The notes under the pieces are model-generated. The model worked only from the letters and a program-made list of their open reading frames with translations, was not told where the DNA came from and made no database searches. Position numbers and translations under genes: made by a program. Positions 31,018 to 59,851 of a stretch of 64,000 nt of DNA are shown in pieces; the first letter of the stretch is position 1; each line of letters opens with the position of its first letter. Where the stretch lies: positions 1 through 64,000 of IMG/VR virus record IMGVR_UViG_3300008111_000002. One strand, given 5' to 3'.

Positions 31018-31281
31018 ATGAAAATTAAAGAGATACTCGAGTCTGCTACGGCTGGTGCAACTTCCGCAGGAAGTATTGCTACTGTACCAAACCCGCATAT
31101 TAGCCCTGGTAAAGCTAGGGGTAAAAAAAGTTATTTGGGTAATCCCTGGGGCGGAATCAGTGGTACTAAAGCACCCCCTCAACCCAAAGTAAAACAGTTA
31201 AAAAATAAAGACGGAACAGCCAAAAATGCACTAGATCAAAGCACTAGTTTATTTGGTGAAGGCAATTACGTCAAAAGATAA
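31018..31281 (+). CDS. Small late protein (MKIKEILE start)
   Basis: Preceded by GGTAAATA (31003-31010). Confidence 0.6.
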   Translation: MKIKEILESATAGATSAGSIATVPNPHISPGKARGKKSYLGNPWGGISGTKAPPQPKVKQLKNKDGTAKNALDQSTSLFGEGNYVKR

Positions 31282-32472: not shown

Positions 32473-32504
32473 AAAAAGCCAGTCCTGAGTTGACTGGCTT
32501 TTTT
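32473..32504 (+). terminator. Intrinsic terminator overlapping a -35 box
   Basis: AAAAAGCCAGTC-ctgagtt-GACTGGCTTTTT(T), a 12-bp inverted repeat. Confidence 0.8.
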
Positions 32505-32518
32505 ATTGACTATATAAT
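32490..32518 (+). promoter_or_regulatory. Sigma70-type promoter TTGACT-N17-TATAAT
   Basis: Consensus-like hexamers upstream of an AAGGAG RBS and the ORF at 32541. Confidence 0.8.
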
Positions 32519-32540: not shown

Positions 32541-32807
32541 ATGGCAAAAATGTATGGTCCTGAAGAACGGGCTAAACTAGAACGTCTCATTAACGAAGGT
32601 TCAAATGTTCTACGCGAAGTAGAAGATCTTCAAGAAGGCTTAAAAGAAACTGTCAAAGCAGTTGCAGAAGAACTACAAGTCAAGCCAAGCATTATTAACA
32701 AAGCAATCAAAATAGCACATAAAGACAATTGGAAATCTCATGAAGAAGAATGGGATGAAATTGAAATGATTCTCGGTGTTACTAAAAACTTACCCGAGAA
32801 AGACTAA
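32541..32807 (+). CDS. Small dsDNA-binding protein (T4 DsbA/GapR-like)
   Basis: Helical pattern LREVEDLQEGLKETVKAVAEELQVKPSIINKAIKIAHK; recognised by eye only. Confidence 0.55.
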   Translation: MAKMYGPEERAKLERLINEGSNVLREVEDLQEGLKETVKAVAEELQVKPSIINKAIKIAHKDNWKSHEEEWDEIEMILGVTKNLPEKD

Positions 32808-33100: not shown

Positions 33101-33231
33101 TGTTATCTGTATTTTTAGAAATAATTTTTAATTGGATAATCATGGGTATGGTCCTAGCTACAGTCATGGCTGGGTGTTTATATTTTGCAATTTTATGCGA
33201 AAAAATTGTTGACTATTTGTTTAGTCACTAA
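33100..33231 (+). CDS. Small hydrophobic ORF (43 aa)
   Basis: MLSVFLEIIFNWIIMGMVLATVMAGCLYFAILCEKIVDYLFSH; TAATG-coupled. Confidence 0.45.
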   Translation: MLSVFLEIIFNWIIMGMVLATVMAGCLYFAILCEKIVDYLFSH

Positions 33232-33248
33232 ATATCCAGTACAGGGTT

Positions 33249-33296
33249 TAATCAGCCATAAATGATTACGTTGGTGTTTGCAAGCCAAAAATTGCA
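33249..33296 (+). promoter_or_regulatory. Twin RNA hairpins with GCCAWAAA loops in the DNA polymerase leader (candidate translational operator)
   Basis: TAATCA-gccataaa-TGATTA (33249-33268) and TGCAA-gccaaaaa-TTGCA (33279-33296), ending one base before the AGGAGA RBS. Confidence 0.6.
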
Positions 33297-33308
33297 TAGG
33301 AGAAAAAT

Positions 33309-35975
33309 TTGAGTTACGTTGACGCATTCTACGACCGCGATAATGATATTATCAACGTTGTTGAACGTGACGATAAGGGTAATCGTCACTATAAAGAACA
33401 TCCCGCAAAACATATTTTCTATTATCAAGACGCTCGTGGAAAATATAAATCAATTTACGGCGAACCTCTAACCAGAGTTAATTGCCGCAACATTAAAGAC
33501 TTACATAAAGAATTAAAAATATACGGTAGTAAAAAACTGTATGAATCGGATATTAATCCAATATTTAGATGTCTTGAAGAAAATTATCTTAATGTAGATT
33601 CTCCAAAACTTAATGTTTGTTTCTTTGACATTGAAGTAGACTTTGACCCAGAACGTGGTTATGCTGCGCCAGATGACGCATTTATGCCAATTACTGCAAT
33701 CACACTACATCTACAATGGTTAGATAGTCTTATTACTCTAGCTATTCCCCCCAAAAGTATTTCAATGGTGCAGGCTAAAGAAAGTGTTAAGGACTTTCCT
33801 AATACGTTTTTGTTTGACAATGAAGCTGATCTTTTAGATACATTTTTAAATCTCATAGACGATGCTGATGTTTTAAGTGGATGGAATAGTGAAGGGTTTG
33901 ATATTCCATATACCGTTAATCGTGTTACTAAAGTATTGAGTAAAGATGACACAAGACGCTTTTGTCTGTGGAATCAATATCCTAAAAAACGAGAATATGA
34001 AAAGTTTGGTAAGACCGCAGTAACTTACGACTTTTATGGACGGGTACACCTTGACAGTCTTGAATTATATCGCAAGTACACATACGAAGAACGACATACG
34101 TATAGACTAGATGCCATTGCTGAGACAGAAATTGACGAGCGTAAGACTGTATACGAAGGCACATTAGATCAATTATACAACGAAGACTTTCGCAAGTTTG
34201 TTGAATATAATAGACAAGATACTGCACTATTAGATAAACTCGATAAAAAATTAAAATTTCTTGATCTTGCAAATAAAATTGCACATGAAAATACTGTTTT
34301 GTTACAAACAACTATGGGTGCCGTAGCTGTTACAGAGCAGGCTATTATTAACGAAGCACATCGCAGAGGCATGCAGGTTCCTAATCGCATTAGACGTGAA
34401 CCAGGTAGTGATCCTGCGGCAGGTGCATATGTTGCTTATCCTAAGAAAGGTATTCATGAGTGGATTGGTTCTCTTGATATTAACAGTCTTTATCCTAGTG
34501 CTATTCGCGCCTTAAACATGGGACCAGAAACCATTGTTGGACAATTACGTCCAGATGGTACTAAAGCATACATAGATGCAGAGATGGACAAGGGCAAATC
34601 CTTTGCCAGTGCATGGGAAGGTATATTTGGTTCATTGGAGTATACTGCTGTAATGAATCAAGAAGTTGGTCGTGAAATAACTATTGATTGGGCCAACGGA
34701 AGTAGTGATGCATTAAGTGCAGCACAAATTTACGAATTGATCTTTAACAGTCATCAACCGTGGGTGATATCAGCTAACGGCACTATTTTTAGTTATGAAC
34801 ACGAAGGTATTATACCAGGACTACTTGCACGTTGGTATAAAGAACGTAAAGAAATGCAGGCAAAATTAAAAGAATGTATACAGGCGGGAAATAAAATTGA
34901 AGAAGAATATTGGGATAAACGTCAACTGGTTAAGAAAATTAACCTTAATAGCTTATATGGTGCTATTCTTAATCCTGGTTGTAGGTTTTTTGATCCTCGT
35001 ATCGGCCAATCCACAACTCTTACTGGACGGCAAATTGCCAAGCACATGGCTAGTAAGGTAAATGAAATAGTCACCGGCGAATACAATCACGTAGGTAAAG
35101 CAATTATCTATGGCGATACTGACTCGTGTTATTTTTCAGCATACAATACTTTGAAAAAAGAAATAGAAAAAGGTGCTATACCGTGGACTAAAGAAACTGT
35201 AGTACAGCTTTATGATCAAATTGGTGATGAAGTTAACGATACGTTTATTAAATTTATGCAAGATGCTTTTCATTGCCCAAAAACTAGAGGTGATGTAATT
35301 AAAGCAGGCAGAGAAATTGTTGCCAGTAAAGGATTGTTCATTACCAAAAAACGCTATGCCGTATTATATTATGACAAAGAAGGCAAACGTTCAGACATAA
35401 ATGGTAAGCCGGGTAAAATCAAAGCCATGGGATTGGATCTTAAACGTTCGGACACTCCTGTAGTAATCCAAGACTTTTTAACAGAAGTGTTAACTAAAGT
35501 TCTTAATGGTATTCCTAAAGAAGAAATTCTAGAATATATTACATCGTTTAGAACTGAATTTAAAACTAGACCCGGATGGGAGAAAGGATCACCAAAACGT
35601 GCAAACAACATTACAGAATATGCCAATAAAGAGAAGAAGCTTGGCAAGGCAAATCTTCCTGGTCATGTTAGAGCAAGCCTTAATTGGAACACGCTCAAAA
35701 GAATGTTCGACGACAAATACTCAATGAACATTGTAGACGGGTCTAAAGTCATTGTGTGTAAAGTCAAAGACAATCCCATGGGATATACATCAGTAGCATA
35801 TCCTGTAGATGAACTTAGACTTCCTCAATGGTTTAAAGACTTACCTTTCAACGATGCTGAAATGGAAAATTCAGTTATCGACGAAAAATTAGAAAACCTT
35901 ATTGGTGTTTTGGAATGGGACATCAGTTCAACAAGGTCGGATAATACATTCAACAAATTGTTTGATTTTGAATGA
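33309..35975 (+). CDS. polB: Family B DNA polymerase (T4 gp43-like)
   Basis: Exo I FFDIEV, Exo II GWNSEGFD, Exo III YNRQD, region II SLDINSLYPS, KKINLNSLYG, YGDTDS, KKRYA. TTG start; C-terminal NKLFDFE resembles a clamp-binding tail. Confidence 0.97.
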   Translation: MSYVDAFYDRDNDIINVVERDDKGNRHYKEHPAKHIFYYQDARGKYKSIYGEPLTRVNCRNIKDLHKELKIYGSKKLYESDINPIFRCLEENYLNVDSPKLNVCFFDIEVDFDPERGYAAPDDAFMPITAITLHLQWLDSLITLAIPPKSISMVQAKESVKDFPNTFLFDNEADLLDTFLNLIDDADVLSGWNSEGFDIPYTVNRVTKVLSKDDTRRFCLWNQYPKKREYEKFGKTAVTYDFYGRVHLDSLELYRKYTYEERHTYRLDAIAETEIDERKTVYEGTLDQLYNEDFRKFVEYNRQDTALLDKLDKKLKFLDLANKIAHENTVLLQTTMGAVAVTEQAIINEAHRRGMQVPNRIRREPGSDPAAGAYVAYPKKGIHEWIGSLDINSLYPSAIRALNMGPETIVGQLRPDGTKAYIDAEMDKGKSFASAWEGIFGSLEYTAVMNQEVGREITIDWANGSSDALSAAQIYELIFNSHQPWVISANGTIFSYEHEGIIPGLLARWYKERKEMQAKLKECIQAGNKIEEEYWDKRQLVKKINLNSLYGAILNPGCRFFDPRIGQSTTLTGRQIAKHMASKVNEIVTGEYNHVGKAIIYGDTDSCYFSAYNTLKKEIEKGAIPWTKETVVQLYDQIGDEVNDTFIKFMQDAFHCPKTRGDVIKAGREIVASKGLFITKKRYAVLYYDKEGKRSDINGKPGKIKAMGLDLKRSDTPVVIQDFLTEVLTKVLNGIPKEEILEYITSFRTEFKTRPGWEKGSPKRANNITEYANKEKKLGKANLPGHVRASLNWNTLKRMFDDKYSMNIVDGSKVIVCKVKDNPMGYTSVAYPVDELRLPQWFKDLPFNDAEMENSVIDEKLENLIGVLEWDISSTRSDNTFNKLFDFE

Positions 35976-35983
35976 TTTCTAGG

Positions 35984-36012
35984 TTGATTTTCATTCTTGA
36001 TCTAAATATAAT
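35984..36012 (+). promoter_or_regulatory. Sigma70-type promoter TTGATT-N17-TATAAT
   Basis: Intergenic, upstream of a GGAG RBS and the ORF at 36038. Confidence 0.7.
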
Positions 36013-58540: not shown

Positions 58541-59851
58541 CTAAATTCCGTATGTATTTAAAAGATACTCTACTTCAGGATTTCCCATTGTTAATAAATG
58601 ATTTCGATTAAATTCAAGAGTATCTTTTAATTTATATGTTAAATCAATTAATTTTGATTCTGGCCATTTTGATATGTTTTCTATTAGATTCATAATAAAT
58701 GAAAATCTTTTTTCGTGATCAAGAATATCATCATATGACTCATCCCAAAATTCCGAAAATGTTTTAAATCCCGATTCTTTTAAATGACCCAATGTTCCCG
58801 GAGCAGCAAAAATAATAAACGGTTGCATAAATGCAATTGGTTTATAAGTTTTTTCAGTTATATGTCTTATATTATTAAAAAAATAAGTTTCGGTAACAAT
58901 ATTGATATAACTATTTTTGTAAAAATCATTCACTTCGGATATTTTCTTCTCCATGGGATATTTAGAAAAATCCGGAGTATCTAATGTTAAAGGCAGAAGC
59001 ACCGAAGAATCATAGACAGTATCCATTCCTAAGCCTAGATTCTTATGTAAATTAATAACATGGGAAGCGTTTTCTATAAAAGGGCGGCCCGATTCTGGTT
59101 GATCTTTCGCCATACTCATATAGGTAACTTCTAGCAAATTTCTTTTAAAAAAATCTAGATATACCAACAATCTATGTTCATTATATCTACGATTAAAGCA
59201 TAAAAATTTTTTCTTTCTTGGGCCAGGAACATATGGATCTGTAGATGCTAGTGCATCTCCAACGTCACACCGATCAAATCTAAAAGTCGGAAAATATTCA
59301 ATCTTAATTTCTTCGGGTATGTTATATTGTTTACAAAAATCTTTATAAATTTCTTTTCCGTTTTGACAATTGCTTACATATACAATTTGAGATAATGGAG
59401 CTCCCTTACCTTTAAAATAATCTGTCATTGCTTTTAAAAATTCGTCATACATATATCCTTCATGTAATAATGTTATAAGAATATAACCTTCTTTTTTTAG
59501 AATTTTTTGAGCCACGGTATCACTGATTCTATTATTATCAAGTAATCCGTTTGAATGATGAAAAGCTCCTAAGATGTCTCGATAGTGATAATTAGTAAAA
59601 TTTAATTCATAAAAAAATGGTTCATCTGGAATATTTGATGGAGAACAAATTCTTAAATTTTTTCCAAATTTATTATAGAAATGAGGCCGCTGTCTTAAAT
59701 CTTCTTTATAACCGTACATAGCATAATCAACATTAATAAATGATGATGTCATGAAATCCATCAATGTTGGAACTCTATTATTTGTAAGGGGTCCGTCCGG
59801 ACCAATCCATTCGTACACAAAATTAATTTTTCTATTATTGCTTGCATTCAT
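58541..59851 (-). CDS. GT10-like GT-B protein, paralog 4
   Basis: FLCFNRRYNEHR, INIVTETYF..HITEKTYKPIAFMQPFII, GFKTF..WDESYD. Confidence 0.55.
   Translation of the reverse strand: MNASNNRKINFVYEWIGPDGPLTNNRVPTLMDFMTSSFINVDYAMYGYKEDLRQRPHFYNKFGKNLRICSPSNIPDEPFFYELNFTNYHYRDILGAFHHSNGLLDNNRISDTVAQKILKKEGYILITLLHEGYMYDEFLKAMTDYFKGKGAPLSQIVYVSNCQNGKEIYKDFCKQYNIPEEIKIEYFPTFRFDRCDVGDALASTDPYVPGPRKKKFLCFNRRYNEHRLLVYLDFFKRNLLEVTYMSMAKDQPESGRPFIENASHVINLHKNLGLGMDTVYDSSVLLPLTLDTPDFSKYPMEKKISEVNDFYKNSYINIVTETYFFNNIRHITEKTYKPIAFMQPFIIFAAPGTLGHLKESGFKTFSEFWDESYDDILDHEKRFSFIMNLIENISKWPESKLIDLTYKLKDTLEFNRNHLLTMGNPEVEYLLNTYGI

What the first reader, a model, noticed from the sequence alone, without database searches (positions are those of the whole stretch)
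33249..33311. Twin hairpins with near-identical 8-nt loops (GCCAUAAA / GCCAAAAA) before the DNA polymerase RBS
Seen: two stems of unrelated sequence (6 bp and 5 bp), both closed by A-U and carrying the same GCCAWAAA loop. The second ends one base before AGGAGA and a weak TTG start. Established: T4 gp43 represses its own translation through a 5-bp stem / 8-nt loop next to its SD. Inference: a tandem autoregulatory operator, or a site for a RegA-like repressor. The matching loops on different stems are hard to explain by chance.
Basis: partly seen in the sequence, partly recalled or inferred. Interest (0 to 1): 0.65.

Follow-up and report, generated by a model that had tools for sequence, protein, structure and literature searches.

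The report
Twin mini-pseudoknot leader of phage polB
The two small hairpins in front of this giant phage's DNA polymerase gene are real and conserved in hundreds of related uncultivated phages; each is a tiny RNA pseudoknot, and together they form an undescribed control element sitting against the ribosome binding site, most likely a translational operator of the kind phage T4 uses for its own polymerase.

Summary
Hairpin 1 is 33249-33268 with loop GCCAUAAA. Hairpin 2 is 33279-33296 with loop GCCAAAAA. AGGAGA is 33298-33303 and the TTG start of an 888-aa family-B polymerase is 33309.

Within this one sequence neither the fold nor the loop word exceeds chance. Comparison settles it. More than 200 distinct polB leaders from IMG/VR contigs carry the element, with compensatory changes in both stems. 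It occurs once per genome, including a complete 372-kb genome, and always heads the polB operon.

Directed scans found GGU..GCC (at least 119 contigs), AGU..GCU (17) and GGC..GCC (2) in polB leaders, and no mismatched combination. Each "hairpin" is therefore an H-type mini-pseudoknot of about 25 nt with an A-rich third loop.

No Rfam family matches. My covariance model does not hit the T4, RB49, Phosso, Atu_ph07 or 121Q leaders. No RegA homologue is present.

Best reading: a polB-specific translational operator abutting the SD, probably bound by the polymerase itself. The binder is inferred, not shown. Riboswitch, another protein and a protein-independent role remain open.

The parts
33238..33311 (+). 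Whole leader element as matched by covariance model R1, from just upstream of unit 1 to the TTG start
   Evidence: 73.1 bits, E 1.7e-19. It is the only significant match in the 209.8-kb genome.
33245..33247 (+). Unit 1, pseudoknot strand S1a (GGU)
   Evidence: Pairs with GCC at 33255-33257. RNAalifold proposed this pairing. Relatives show AGU:GCU, AGC:GCU, GGC:GCC, AGU:ACU and GGU:ACC.
33249..33268 (+). Unit 1 hairpin (S2): 6-bp stem with 8-nt loop GCCAUAAA. The loop comprises S1b (33255-33257) and the A-rich L3 (33258-33262)
   Evidence: Sequence read. Stem variants in relatives include GCG(n)G/CCGC, GAUCA/UGAUC, GUCC/GGAC, AACG/CGUU, GGCAG/CUGCC, GUCG/CGAC and GAUUG/CAAUC.
33273..33275 (+). 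Unit 2, pseudoknot strand S1a (GGU), followed by L1 (GUU, 33276-33278)
   Evidence: Pairs with GCC at 33284-33286. The G-C to A-U change is always compensated: 17 AGU..GCU against 0 AGU..GCC and 0 GGU..GC[AGU] in polB leaders.
33279..33296 (+). Unit 2 hairpin (S2): 5-bp stem UGCAA/UUGCA with loop GCCAAAAA. The loop comprises S1b (33284-33286) and L3 (33287-33291)
   Evidence: The two central pairs show CG/UA/AU/UG and AU/GC/CG/GU types.
33298..33303 (+). Shine-Dalgarno AGGAGA, one base after unit 2
   Evidence: Read. An SD at this place is conserved in all relatives printed.
33309..35975 (+). polB, family-B DNA polymerase, 888 aa, TTG start
   Evidence: 50% identical to the Sinorhizobium phage Phosso polymerase, 43% to 121Q-like jumbo phages, and 26% to T4 gp43 (E 2e-60).

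Best explanation
The leader of the polB mRNA carries two tandem H-type mini-pseudoknots of about 25 nt each. In each unit a GGY triplet (S1a) lies 1-4 nt upstream of a 4-6-bp hairpin (S2). It pairs with the first three loop bases, GCC (S1b). The rest of the loop (NNAAN, AA invariant) is the third pseudoknot loop. I infer that this loop lies in the minor groove of S1. Unit 2 ends one base before the Shine-Dalgarno sequence. The element is a gene-specific translational operator. A protein that recognises the folded pseudoknot(s) would sit on the mRNA just 5' of the SD and hinder 30S binding, setting how much polymerase is made from a weak TTG start. The most likely binder is the polymerase itself when it is not engaged on DNA, as in T4, RB69 and RB49 gp43 autoregulation. 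Shown here: the structure, its conservation, its covariation, its uniqueness per genome and its fixed place at the head of the polB operon. Inferred: that it represses translation, and who binds it.
For: Structure. Both stems covary (56 cells changed on both sides against 12.9 in shuffles; slid controls pair in 22-42% of cells against 95.8%). Unit 2 including the pseudoknot forms 608/608 standard pairs across 76 distinct sequences, with G-C to A-U at S1 pair 1, U.G to C-G at pair 3, and 3 covarying S2 pairs. Directed IMG/VR scans found only complementary S1 combinations in polB leaders: GGU..GCC in at least 119 contigs, AGU..GCU in 17 loci, GGC..GCC in 2. They found none with AGU..GCC, GGU..GC[AGU], middle-pair variants, or GGA/GGG. 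In unit 1 the S1 types GGU:GCC, GGC:GCC, AGU:GCU, AGC:GCU, AGU:ACU and GGU:ACC occur. Pair 1 changes at least 5 times on the polymerase tree. G.U pairs and 1-nt indels place the constraint on RNA, not on coding sequence or duplex DNA.

Specificity. There is one copy in the 209.8-kb record, in each of 95 loci, and in a complete 372-kb genome. Of 116 pattern hits, 111 are followed directly by polB. In the other 5 a short ORF lies in between; in four of them its stop overlaps the polB ATG, and in L174 a short spacer follows. There are no polB-leader hits in 185,579 GTDB genomes.

Mechanism by analogy. T4 gp43 binds a 5-bp/8-nt hairpin upstream of its SD and represses its own translation. The loop AA or AC bases are critical, and RB49 has a -UAAA- loop (PMC3014915; leaders read). 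Here AA is invariant and UAAA is frequent. The isolated hairpins are weak (-3.2 and -3.9 kcal/mol) and S1 has only 3 bp. That fits a fold that needs a partner for stability.
Against: No binding or expression data exist. The window polymerase is only 26% identical to T4 gp43, and the review notes that some T4-related polymerases do not autoregulate. The RNA shows no homology to the T4 or RB49 operators, and those are not pseudoknots. Nearly all conserved bases are explained by the fold itself, so nothing points specifically to PolB rather than another ligand. The closest cultured relatives (Phosso, Atu_ph07, 121Q) lack the element, as do some lineages within the clade (L238, L246, L252, L254, L263, L281). 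Unit 1 S1 complementarity fails in L191 and in the L275/L283 lineage. S1 pair 1 of unit 2 changed only once on the tree.
Confidence: 0.45

Rival explanations
1. Protein-independent cis element. The two compact pseudoknots at or near the 5' end of the polB mRNA protect it from 5'-end-dependent decay. Alternatively they tune 30S loading by holding the SD in a defined, unpaired context or by acting as a standby platform. No trans-acting ligand is involved.
For: The SD itself is never paired with the element. The conserved bases are those the fold needs. The element is kept at the head of the operon even when a short ORF is inserted before polB. In L120 unit 1 is replaced by an unrelated G+C-rich hairpin, as expected if unit 1 is a generic 5' structure.
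Against: Any stable hairpin would serve as a stabiliser. Yet a specific, marginally stable pseudoknot geometry is maintained over polymerases diverged to about 60% identity: 3-bp S1, no nucleotide between S1b and S2a, and AA in L3. It is found only at polB, not at other genes of the same genomes.
Confidence: 0.2
2. Riboswitch. Each mini-pseudoknot, or the pair, is a small aptamer for a metabolite, for example a nucleotide or deoxynucleotide-related compound. Ligand binding would stabilise the 3-bp S1 next to the SD and change polB translation, as in preQ1-I pseudoknots or the twin hairpins of guanidine-II.
For: The H-type pseudoknot has a very short second helix and an A-rich loop next to an SD. 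The hairpins alone are weak. Tandem and single-unit architectures both exist. The element is strictly tied to a single metabolic or replication gene.
Against: No Rfam riboswitch family matches, even at E up to 10. Few conserved unpaired bases are left for a pocket. Loop positions 4-5 of unit 2 and L1 of unit 1 vary freely, and the two units conserve different loop positions. About 25 nt is smaller than any known natural aptamer (own knowledge: preQ1-I is about 34 nt).
Confidence: 0.13
3. Operator for a different trans-acting protein: a phage RNA-binding regulator (RegA-like or new) or a host protein, rather than PolB.
For: The comparative data do not name the binder. Twin units with the same recognition features would suit a dimeric protein, as in the E. 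coli thrS operator (own knowledge).
Against: There is no RegA family (PF01818) match in the 210-kb record or in a complete 372-kb relative carrying the element. RegA sites are unstructured, A+U-rich, overlap the AUG and occur on about 30 mRNAs (PMC3014915). This element is structured, lies upstream of the SD and is unique to polB. A dedicated regulator for one gene is less economical than autoregulation, and single-unit forms exist.
Confidence: 0.15
4. DNA-level signal, or chance: two inverted repeats acting as a transcription-factor operator or promoter element, or no function at all.
For: Within the single window sequence neither the fold nor the loop word is beyond chance.
Against: G.U pairs are kept on one strand only. 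There is covariation with a non-palindromic upstream triplet, conservation in more than 200 distinct leaders, and a fixed register to the SD.
Confidence: 0.03

Closest known systems
Translational operator of T4 / RB69 / RB49 gene 43 (DNA polymerase autoregulation)
   Same: It lies in the 5' leader of a phage family-B DNA polymerase gene, just upstream of or touching the SD. The SD-proximal unit in the window has a 5-bp stem and 8-nt loop like T4. The loop holds AUAA/UAAA-type bases, with AA invariant here and reported as critical there (PMC3014915). It is specific to one gene.
   Different: There is no detectable homology: R1 does not hit the T4 or RB49 leaders. Here there are two units, each a pseudoknot with an upstream GGY:GCC helix, whereas the review states there is no evidence for a pseudoknot in the gene 43 operator. 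The element ends 1 nt from the SD. In T4 nine nucleotides separate the hairpin from the SD, and in RB49 the SD lies in the 3' strand of the stem. The polymerases are only 26% identical. Binding is untested.
T4 gene 32 mRNA pseudoknot (gp32 autoregulation)
   Same: It is a small H-type pseudoknot in the 5' leader of a phage replication gene, used for autogenous translational control (PMC3014915).
   Different: The gene 32 pseudoknot lies far upstream. It nucleates cooperative binding along an unstructured A+U-rich tract to the RBS. It is single, and it serves an ssDNA-binding protein rather than a polymerase.
E. coli thrS operator and rpsO pseudoknot (own knowledge; rpsO also mentioned in PMC3014915)
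   Same: thrS has two similar stem-loops upstream of the SD, bound by the gene's own product in competition with the 30S subunit. rpsO has a pseudoknot at the RBS stabilised by the gene's own product.
   Different: These are host genes with no sequence relation. The thrS loops mimic a tRNA anticodon, and the rpsO pseudoknot contains the SD and AUG.
preQ1-I and guanidine-II (mini-ykkC) riboswitches (own knowledge)
   Same: preQ1-I is a minimal H-type pseudoknot with an A-rich loop next to an SD. Guanidine-II has two tandem small hairpins with identical conserved loops ahead of an SD.
   Different: There is no Rfam match. In guanidine-II the loops pair with each other, whereas here each loop pairs with its own upstream triplet (L074, L239, L294). 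No ligand is known.

Membership tests
gp43-type translational operator (T4/RB69/RB49) | Located in the 5' leader of the phage family-B DNA polymerase gene, next to the ribosome binding site | tested here: met
   Unit 2 ends at 33296, the SD is 33298-33303 and the start is 33309. 111 of 116 pattern hits directly precede polB, and the other 5 precede a short ORF that polB follows.
gp43-type translational operator (T4/RB69/RB49) | Simple hairpin of about 5 bp with a loop of about 8 nt (T4 18 nt in all, RB69 16 nt), no pseudoknot | tested here: not met
   The stem and loop sizes fit. However, the first three loop bases pair with an upstream GGY with perfect covariation, so the unit is a pseudoknot. 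The review reports no evidence of one for gene 43.
gp43-type translational operator (T4/RB69/RB49) | Loop sequence -UAAC- (T4, RB69) or -UAAA- (RB49), with the 3' AC/AA bases important | tested here: inconclusive
   Loop 1 is GCCAUAAA. Loop 2 is GCCNNAAR, often GUAAA. AA is invariant. The match is too short to count as evidence of homology.
gp43-type translational operator (T4/RB69/RB49) | Sequence or structure homology to the T4 or RB49 operator | tested here: not met
   Model R1 with filters off gives no hit at the gene 43 leaders of T4 (L285) or RB49 (L286). All matches have E > 1 and lie elsewhere.
gp43-type translational operator (T4/RB69/RB49) | Bound by the cognate polymerase, with repression of its own translation | not testable with these tools
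   This needs EMSA, toeprinting or reporter assays.
RegA-type translational repression site | A RegA (PF01818) protein is encoded by the phage | tested here: not met
   No match at E <= 1 in G000 (209.8 kb, about 60% complete) or in the complete 372-kb relative G001.
RegA-type translational repression site | Unstructured A+U-rich site overlapping or just 5' of the AUG, present on many early mRNAs | tested here: not met
   The element is structured, lies upstream of the SD and occurs once per genome. RegA properties are taken from PMC3014915.
Known Rfam families (including pseudoknot riboswitches preQ1-I/II/III, SAM-II, fluoride, guanidine-II/III) | Match to the family covariance model | tested here: not met
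   No match at gathering score in the window. At E <= 10 on 33150-33400 there is only a spurious rRNA fragment.
H-type RNA pseudoknot (structural class) | Two helices in the order S1a-S2a-S1b-S2b, both supported by covariation, with loop lengths that allow both to form together | tested here: met
   S2 and S1 both covary (scans 59-65). L1 is 1-4 nt, there is no nucleotide between S2a and S1b, and L3 is 3-6 nt, mostly 5. That both helices form at the same time is inferred from topology, not shown.

The most novel reading that the evidence does not exclude
The element is a new, exceptionally small tandem pseudoknot riboswitch. Each unit of about 25 nt needs a small molecule, plausibly a nucleotide or deoxynucleotide-related metabolite, to close its 3-bp S1 helix next to the SD. 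A jumbo phage would then couple synthesis of its DNA polymerase directly to the precursor pool.
Probability: 0.12. Interest if true: 0.9.

Novelty: new variant of a known kind. Interest (0 to 1): 0.68.

Why it matters
Autogenous translational control of a replicative DNA polymerase is known essentially from T4-type phages, and its RNA-protein complex has never been resolved (PMC3014915). This is an unrelated, much better sampled RNA at the same place in the polymerase gene of a large clade of uncultivated freshwater and marine jumbo phages.

It offers several things:
- Hundreds of natural variants.
- A minimal, well-defined fold of about 25 nt per unit.
- Natural one-unit and two-unit forms.
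- Lineages that have lost the element.

That makes testable whether RNA-mediated self-limitation of polymerase synthesis is a general solution among large phages. It also supplies a compact pseudoknot for structural work and a new RNA family, absent from Rfam, for annotating viral metagenomes. If the ligand were a metabolite rather than the polymerase, it would be among the smallest natural aptamers.

Tried and rejected
1. Single-sequence statistics do not single out the site: loop word count, fold z-score, and isolated hairpin energies.

2. A third AGCCAAAAAU at 31218 lies inside an ORF with no flanking stem and is chance.

3. The second-best R1 match, at 59347-59417 on the minus strand (14.8 bits), lies inside a 436-aa ORF without proper stems and is chance.

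4. The cultured relatives Phosso, Atu_ph07 and 121Q have no such element in their polB leaders.

5. Loop-loop kissing through the self-complementary GC, and cross-unit pairing, are rejected. Changes GCC to GCU or ACC covary with the triplet upstream of the same unit (L074, L112, L239, L242, L294), and single-unit forms exist.

6. A leader peptide reading is rejected. An upstream AUG is present in only some relatives, and 1-nt indels break any frame.

7. An extension of S1 to AUGGU:GCCAU is possible in many relatives but shows no covariation.

8. Fully automatic parsing of unit 1 was too ambiguous in register for a clean statistic. For unit 1 I rely on the loop-anchored parse and inspection of its failures. 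That parse labels only complementary cases, so the change counts are lower-quality evidence than the unit 2 scans.

10. The GTDB genome scan gave no polB-leader hit and therefore no host clue.

11. Promoter: no convincing sigma-70 site lies directly upstream of the leader. The transcription start is unknown.

12. Literature searches found no description of this motif. Petrov & Karam 2002 (PMC137073) is not held in the library.
Full report
**1. What is in the window.** The window is the first 64 kb of a 209.8-kb IMG/VR virus record, estimated about 60% complete, so the virus is a jumbo phage. ORF 33309-35975 (+) encodes an 888-aa family-B DNA polymerase. Its nearest cultured relatives are Sinorhizobium phage Phosso (50% identity), Agrobacterium phage Atu_ph07 (46%) and the 121Q/Rak2-like coliphages (43%). 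T4 gp43 is 26% identical (E 2e-60).

An in-frame TAG at 33297-33299 leaves TTG at 33309 as the only start. AGGAGA lies at 33298-33303.
- Hairpin 1: 33249-33254 / 33263-33268, loop GCCAUAAA.
- Hairpin 2: 33279-33283 / 33292-33296, loop GCCAAAAA.

The upstream ORF ends at 33231. Further upstream lie two small ORFs, one of them weakly similar to a membrane-protein family, and a T4 DsbA-like gene (32541-32807) with a strong sigma-70-like promoter at 32490-32518.

**2. Is it more than chance?** Not from this sequence alone. GCCAWAAA occurs 7 times against 8.4 expected. The leader folds no better than shuffles (z = +1.0). The hairpins alone are worth -3.2 and -3.9 kcal/mol. The evidence is comparative.

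A protein-seeded search of IMG/VR returned 80 loci whose polymerases are 81-100% identical to the window's. All carry the two hairpins at the same distance from the start.

On the 58 distinct leaders (alignment A1):
- 95.8% of pair cells form standard pairs, against 84.3% in column shuffles and 22-42% when partners are slid.
- 56 cells are changed on both sides, against 12.9 expected.
- Hairpin 2 shows CG/UA/AU/UG and AU/GC/CG/GU at its two central pairs.
- Hairpin 1 switches between unrelated stems, such as GCG(n)G/CCGC, AUCA/UGAU and GAA(g)G/CUUC.

**3. Breadth and specificity.** Of the 116 matches analysed:
- 111 are followed at once by the polB start (M-S-Y-V-D-A...).
- In the other 5 an ORF sits between the element and polB: 57-63 aa and Cys-rich in four, 204 aa in one. 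In the four short cases the ORF's stop overlaps the polB ATG; in L174 a short spacer with its own SD follows.

A covariance model (R1) finds:
- one match in the window's own 209.8-kb record (73 bits, E 1.7e-19). The next hit, at 14.8 bits, lies inside a coding region;
- one in each of 95 loci;
- one in each of five large relatives, including a complete 372-kb genome with terminal repeats.

The same pattern hit 39 places in 185,579 prokaryotic species genomes, none of them a polB leader. Rfam has no match at gathering score or at E <= 10.

**4. The units are pseudoknots.** RNAalifold on A1 proposed that GGU (33245-33247) pairs with the GCC that opens loop 1. One relative had AGU...GCU there. 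The same GGU-N3-stem-GCC arrangement precedes hairpin 2 (33273-33275 with 33284-33286).

I tested this on unit 2 with directed scans in which only the two triplets were varied. In polB leaders the scans found:

| Upstream triplet .. loop triplet | polB-leader hits |
|---|---|
| GGU..GCC | at least 119 contigs |
| AGU..GCU | 17 loci (14 directly before polB, 3 with a short ORF between) |
| GGC..GCC | 2 loci |
| AGU..GCC/GCA/GCG | 0 |
| [C/U]GU..any | 0 |
| GGU..GC[A/G/U] | 0 |
| any middle-pair variant | 0 |
| GGA or GGG | 0 |

On 76 distinct unit 2 sequences, the structure with both helices gives 608 of 608 standard pairs. Four of the eight pairs change on both sides.

In unit 1 the triplet combinations seen are GGU:GCC, GGC:GCC, AGU:GCU (L074/L112 lineage and L239), AGC:GCU (L242), AGU:ACU and GGU:ACC (L294). 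All are complementary. On a tree of the polymerase N-terminus, pair 1 of unit 1 changes at least 5 times and pair 3 changes 18 times. Pair 1 of unit 2 changes once. That parse labelled only complementary cases, so it carries a caveat.

The genuine exceptions are L191 (loop UCC) and the L275/L283 lineage (AUU against ACU).

The changes are intra-unit. L074 and L239 change unit 1 only, and L294 has GGU:ACC in unit 1 with AGU:GCU in unit 2. That excludes cross-unit pairing and loop-loop kissing.

The order S1a-L1(1-4 nt)-S2a-S1b-L3(about 5 nt, AA invariant)-S2b, with no nucleotide between S2a and S1b, is the classical H-type topology. The loop lengths allow both helices to coexist. That they stack coaxially and that the AA bases dock in the S1 minor groove is inference.

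**5. Diversity of architecture.** A second protein-seeded set, from a polymerase 69% identical to the window's, shows:
- the twin form;
- a form in which a single GCC-loop unit (for example GGUA-CGUUG-GCCAUAAA-CAACG) directly abuts AGGAG and is preceded by a different hairpin;
- lineages in which the "different hairpin" is itself a unit 1 pseudoknot with AGU:ACU;
- lineages with no leader element at all (L238, L246, L252, L254, L263, L281).

In L120 unit 1 is replaced by a G+C-rich hairpin followed by seven U. The SD-proximal unit is therefore the constant module.

The cultured relatives Phosso, Atu_ph07 and 121Q lack the element.

**6. How it most likely works.** Established by the data: this is a structured RNA, unique to the polB operon head, whose 3' edge lies 0-2 nt from the SD and 12 nt from the start codon.

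Inference: it controls translation initiation of polB. The helices are weak and the conserved bases are those the fold needs. That suggests the folded shape is recognised and stabilised by a partner.

The precedent is T4, RB69 and RB49 gp43, which bind a hairpin upstream of their own SD and repress translation when not engaged on DNA (PMC3014915; PMC535899). The T4 leader has AGCCU-AAUAACUC-GGGCU nine nucleotides before its SD. RB49 has CUUUC-GUAAAU-GAAGG with the SD in the stem. The shared AUAA/UAAA and the importance of AA are leads, not proof. R1 does not recognise those leaders, and they are not pseudoknots.

My estimates:
- 0.45 that PolB itself is the binder.
- 0.15 for another protein. 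RegA-like is unlikely: there is no PF01818 homologue, and RegA sites are unstructured and numerous.
- 0.13 for a metabolite (riboswitch).
- 0.2 for a protein-independent role in stability or ribosome loading.
- 0.03 for a DNA-level signal or chance.

**7. Comparison and novelty.** Functionally the nearest thing is the gp43 operator: same gene, same place, similar size. It fails membership on structure (pseudoknot, tandem) and on homology. Structurally it recalls the T4 gene 32 and E. coli rpsO pseudoknots, and in its twin layout the thrS operator or guanidine-II, without any sequence relation.

I found no description of it in Rfam or in the searchable literature. I rate it a new variant of a known kind: a cis-regulatory leader, probably a translational operator, of a phage DNA polymerase gene. 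It has a well-supported new RNA fold.

**8. Limits.** The promoter and transcription start are unknown. In some lineages a TATAAT-like motif lies so close to unit 1 that its S1a might not be transcribed from that promoter (sequences). Part of the sequence set was retrieved by patterns that fix some unit 2 bases, although never the covarying stem positions, and the triplets were varied explicitly. The binder is not identified.

Noticed in passing
window 1-64000: The T4 late-promoter octamer TATAAATA is absent from the whole 64-kb window, with 10.4 +/- 3.0 copies expected from shuffles. Several relatives have TATAAATA or TAAATA-like words about 10-13 nt upstream of unit 1. The absence suggests avoidance or a reserved signal.
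   Followed up: partly
window 32490-32518 and 32541-32807: A near-consensus sigma-70-type promoter (TTGACT-17-TATAAT) lies ahead of an 88-aa T4 DsbA-like protein (PF11126, phrog_639). Two small ORFs follow (97 aa, weakly YwiC-like, and 43 aa), and then polB.
   Followed up: partly
window 35984-36012: A canonical promoter-like TTGATT-17-TATAAT lies between the polB stop (35975) and the next gene (36038, 245 aa, phrog_12062). It overlaps the same octamer, CUAAAUAU, that precedes the polB leader at 33228-33235.
   Followed up: no
L097, L105, L106, L122 (57-63 aa ORFs); L174 (204 aa ORF); L302, L327, L312: In some relatives a short ORF has been inserted between the leader element and polB. In four cases it is Cys-rich with a C-x2-C...C-x-C pattern and its stop overlaps the polB ATG, which would allow translational coupling. 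In L105, L106 and L122 the SD after unit 2 is degenerate.
   Followed up: partly
L120:92-164 (- strand): Unit 1 is replaced by a G+C-rich hairpin followed by seven U (terminator- or attenuator-like) that directly abuts unit 2.
   Followed up: no
L240, L245, L248, L250, L261 and relatives: In the single-unit lineage, the sequence upstream of the SD-proximal unit is a longer hairpin with a conserved base (CGCC...GGC), followed by a conserved AUGUAGAAGGU. This includes a minimal AUG-UAG start-stop pair. Its function is unknown.
   Followed up: no
polB start codon across L004-L083: The start codon is TTG in the window and in many relatives but ATG in others with otherwise near-identical leaders. 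Initiation strength appears to be evolutionarily tuned.
   Followed up: no
window 33153-33174: A terminator-like hairpin plus a T-rich tail lies inside the 43-aa ORF just upstream of the leader. It could separate polB transcription from the upstream genes.
   Followed up: no
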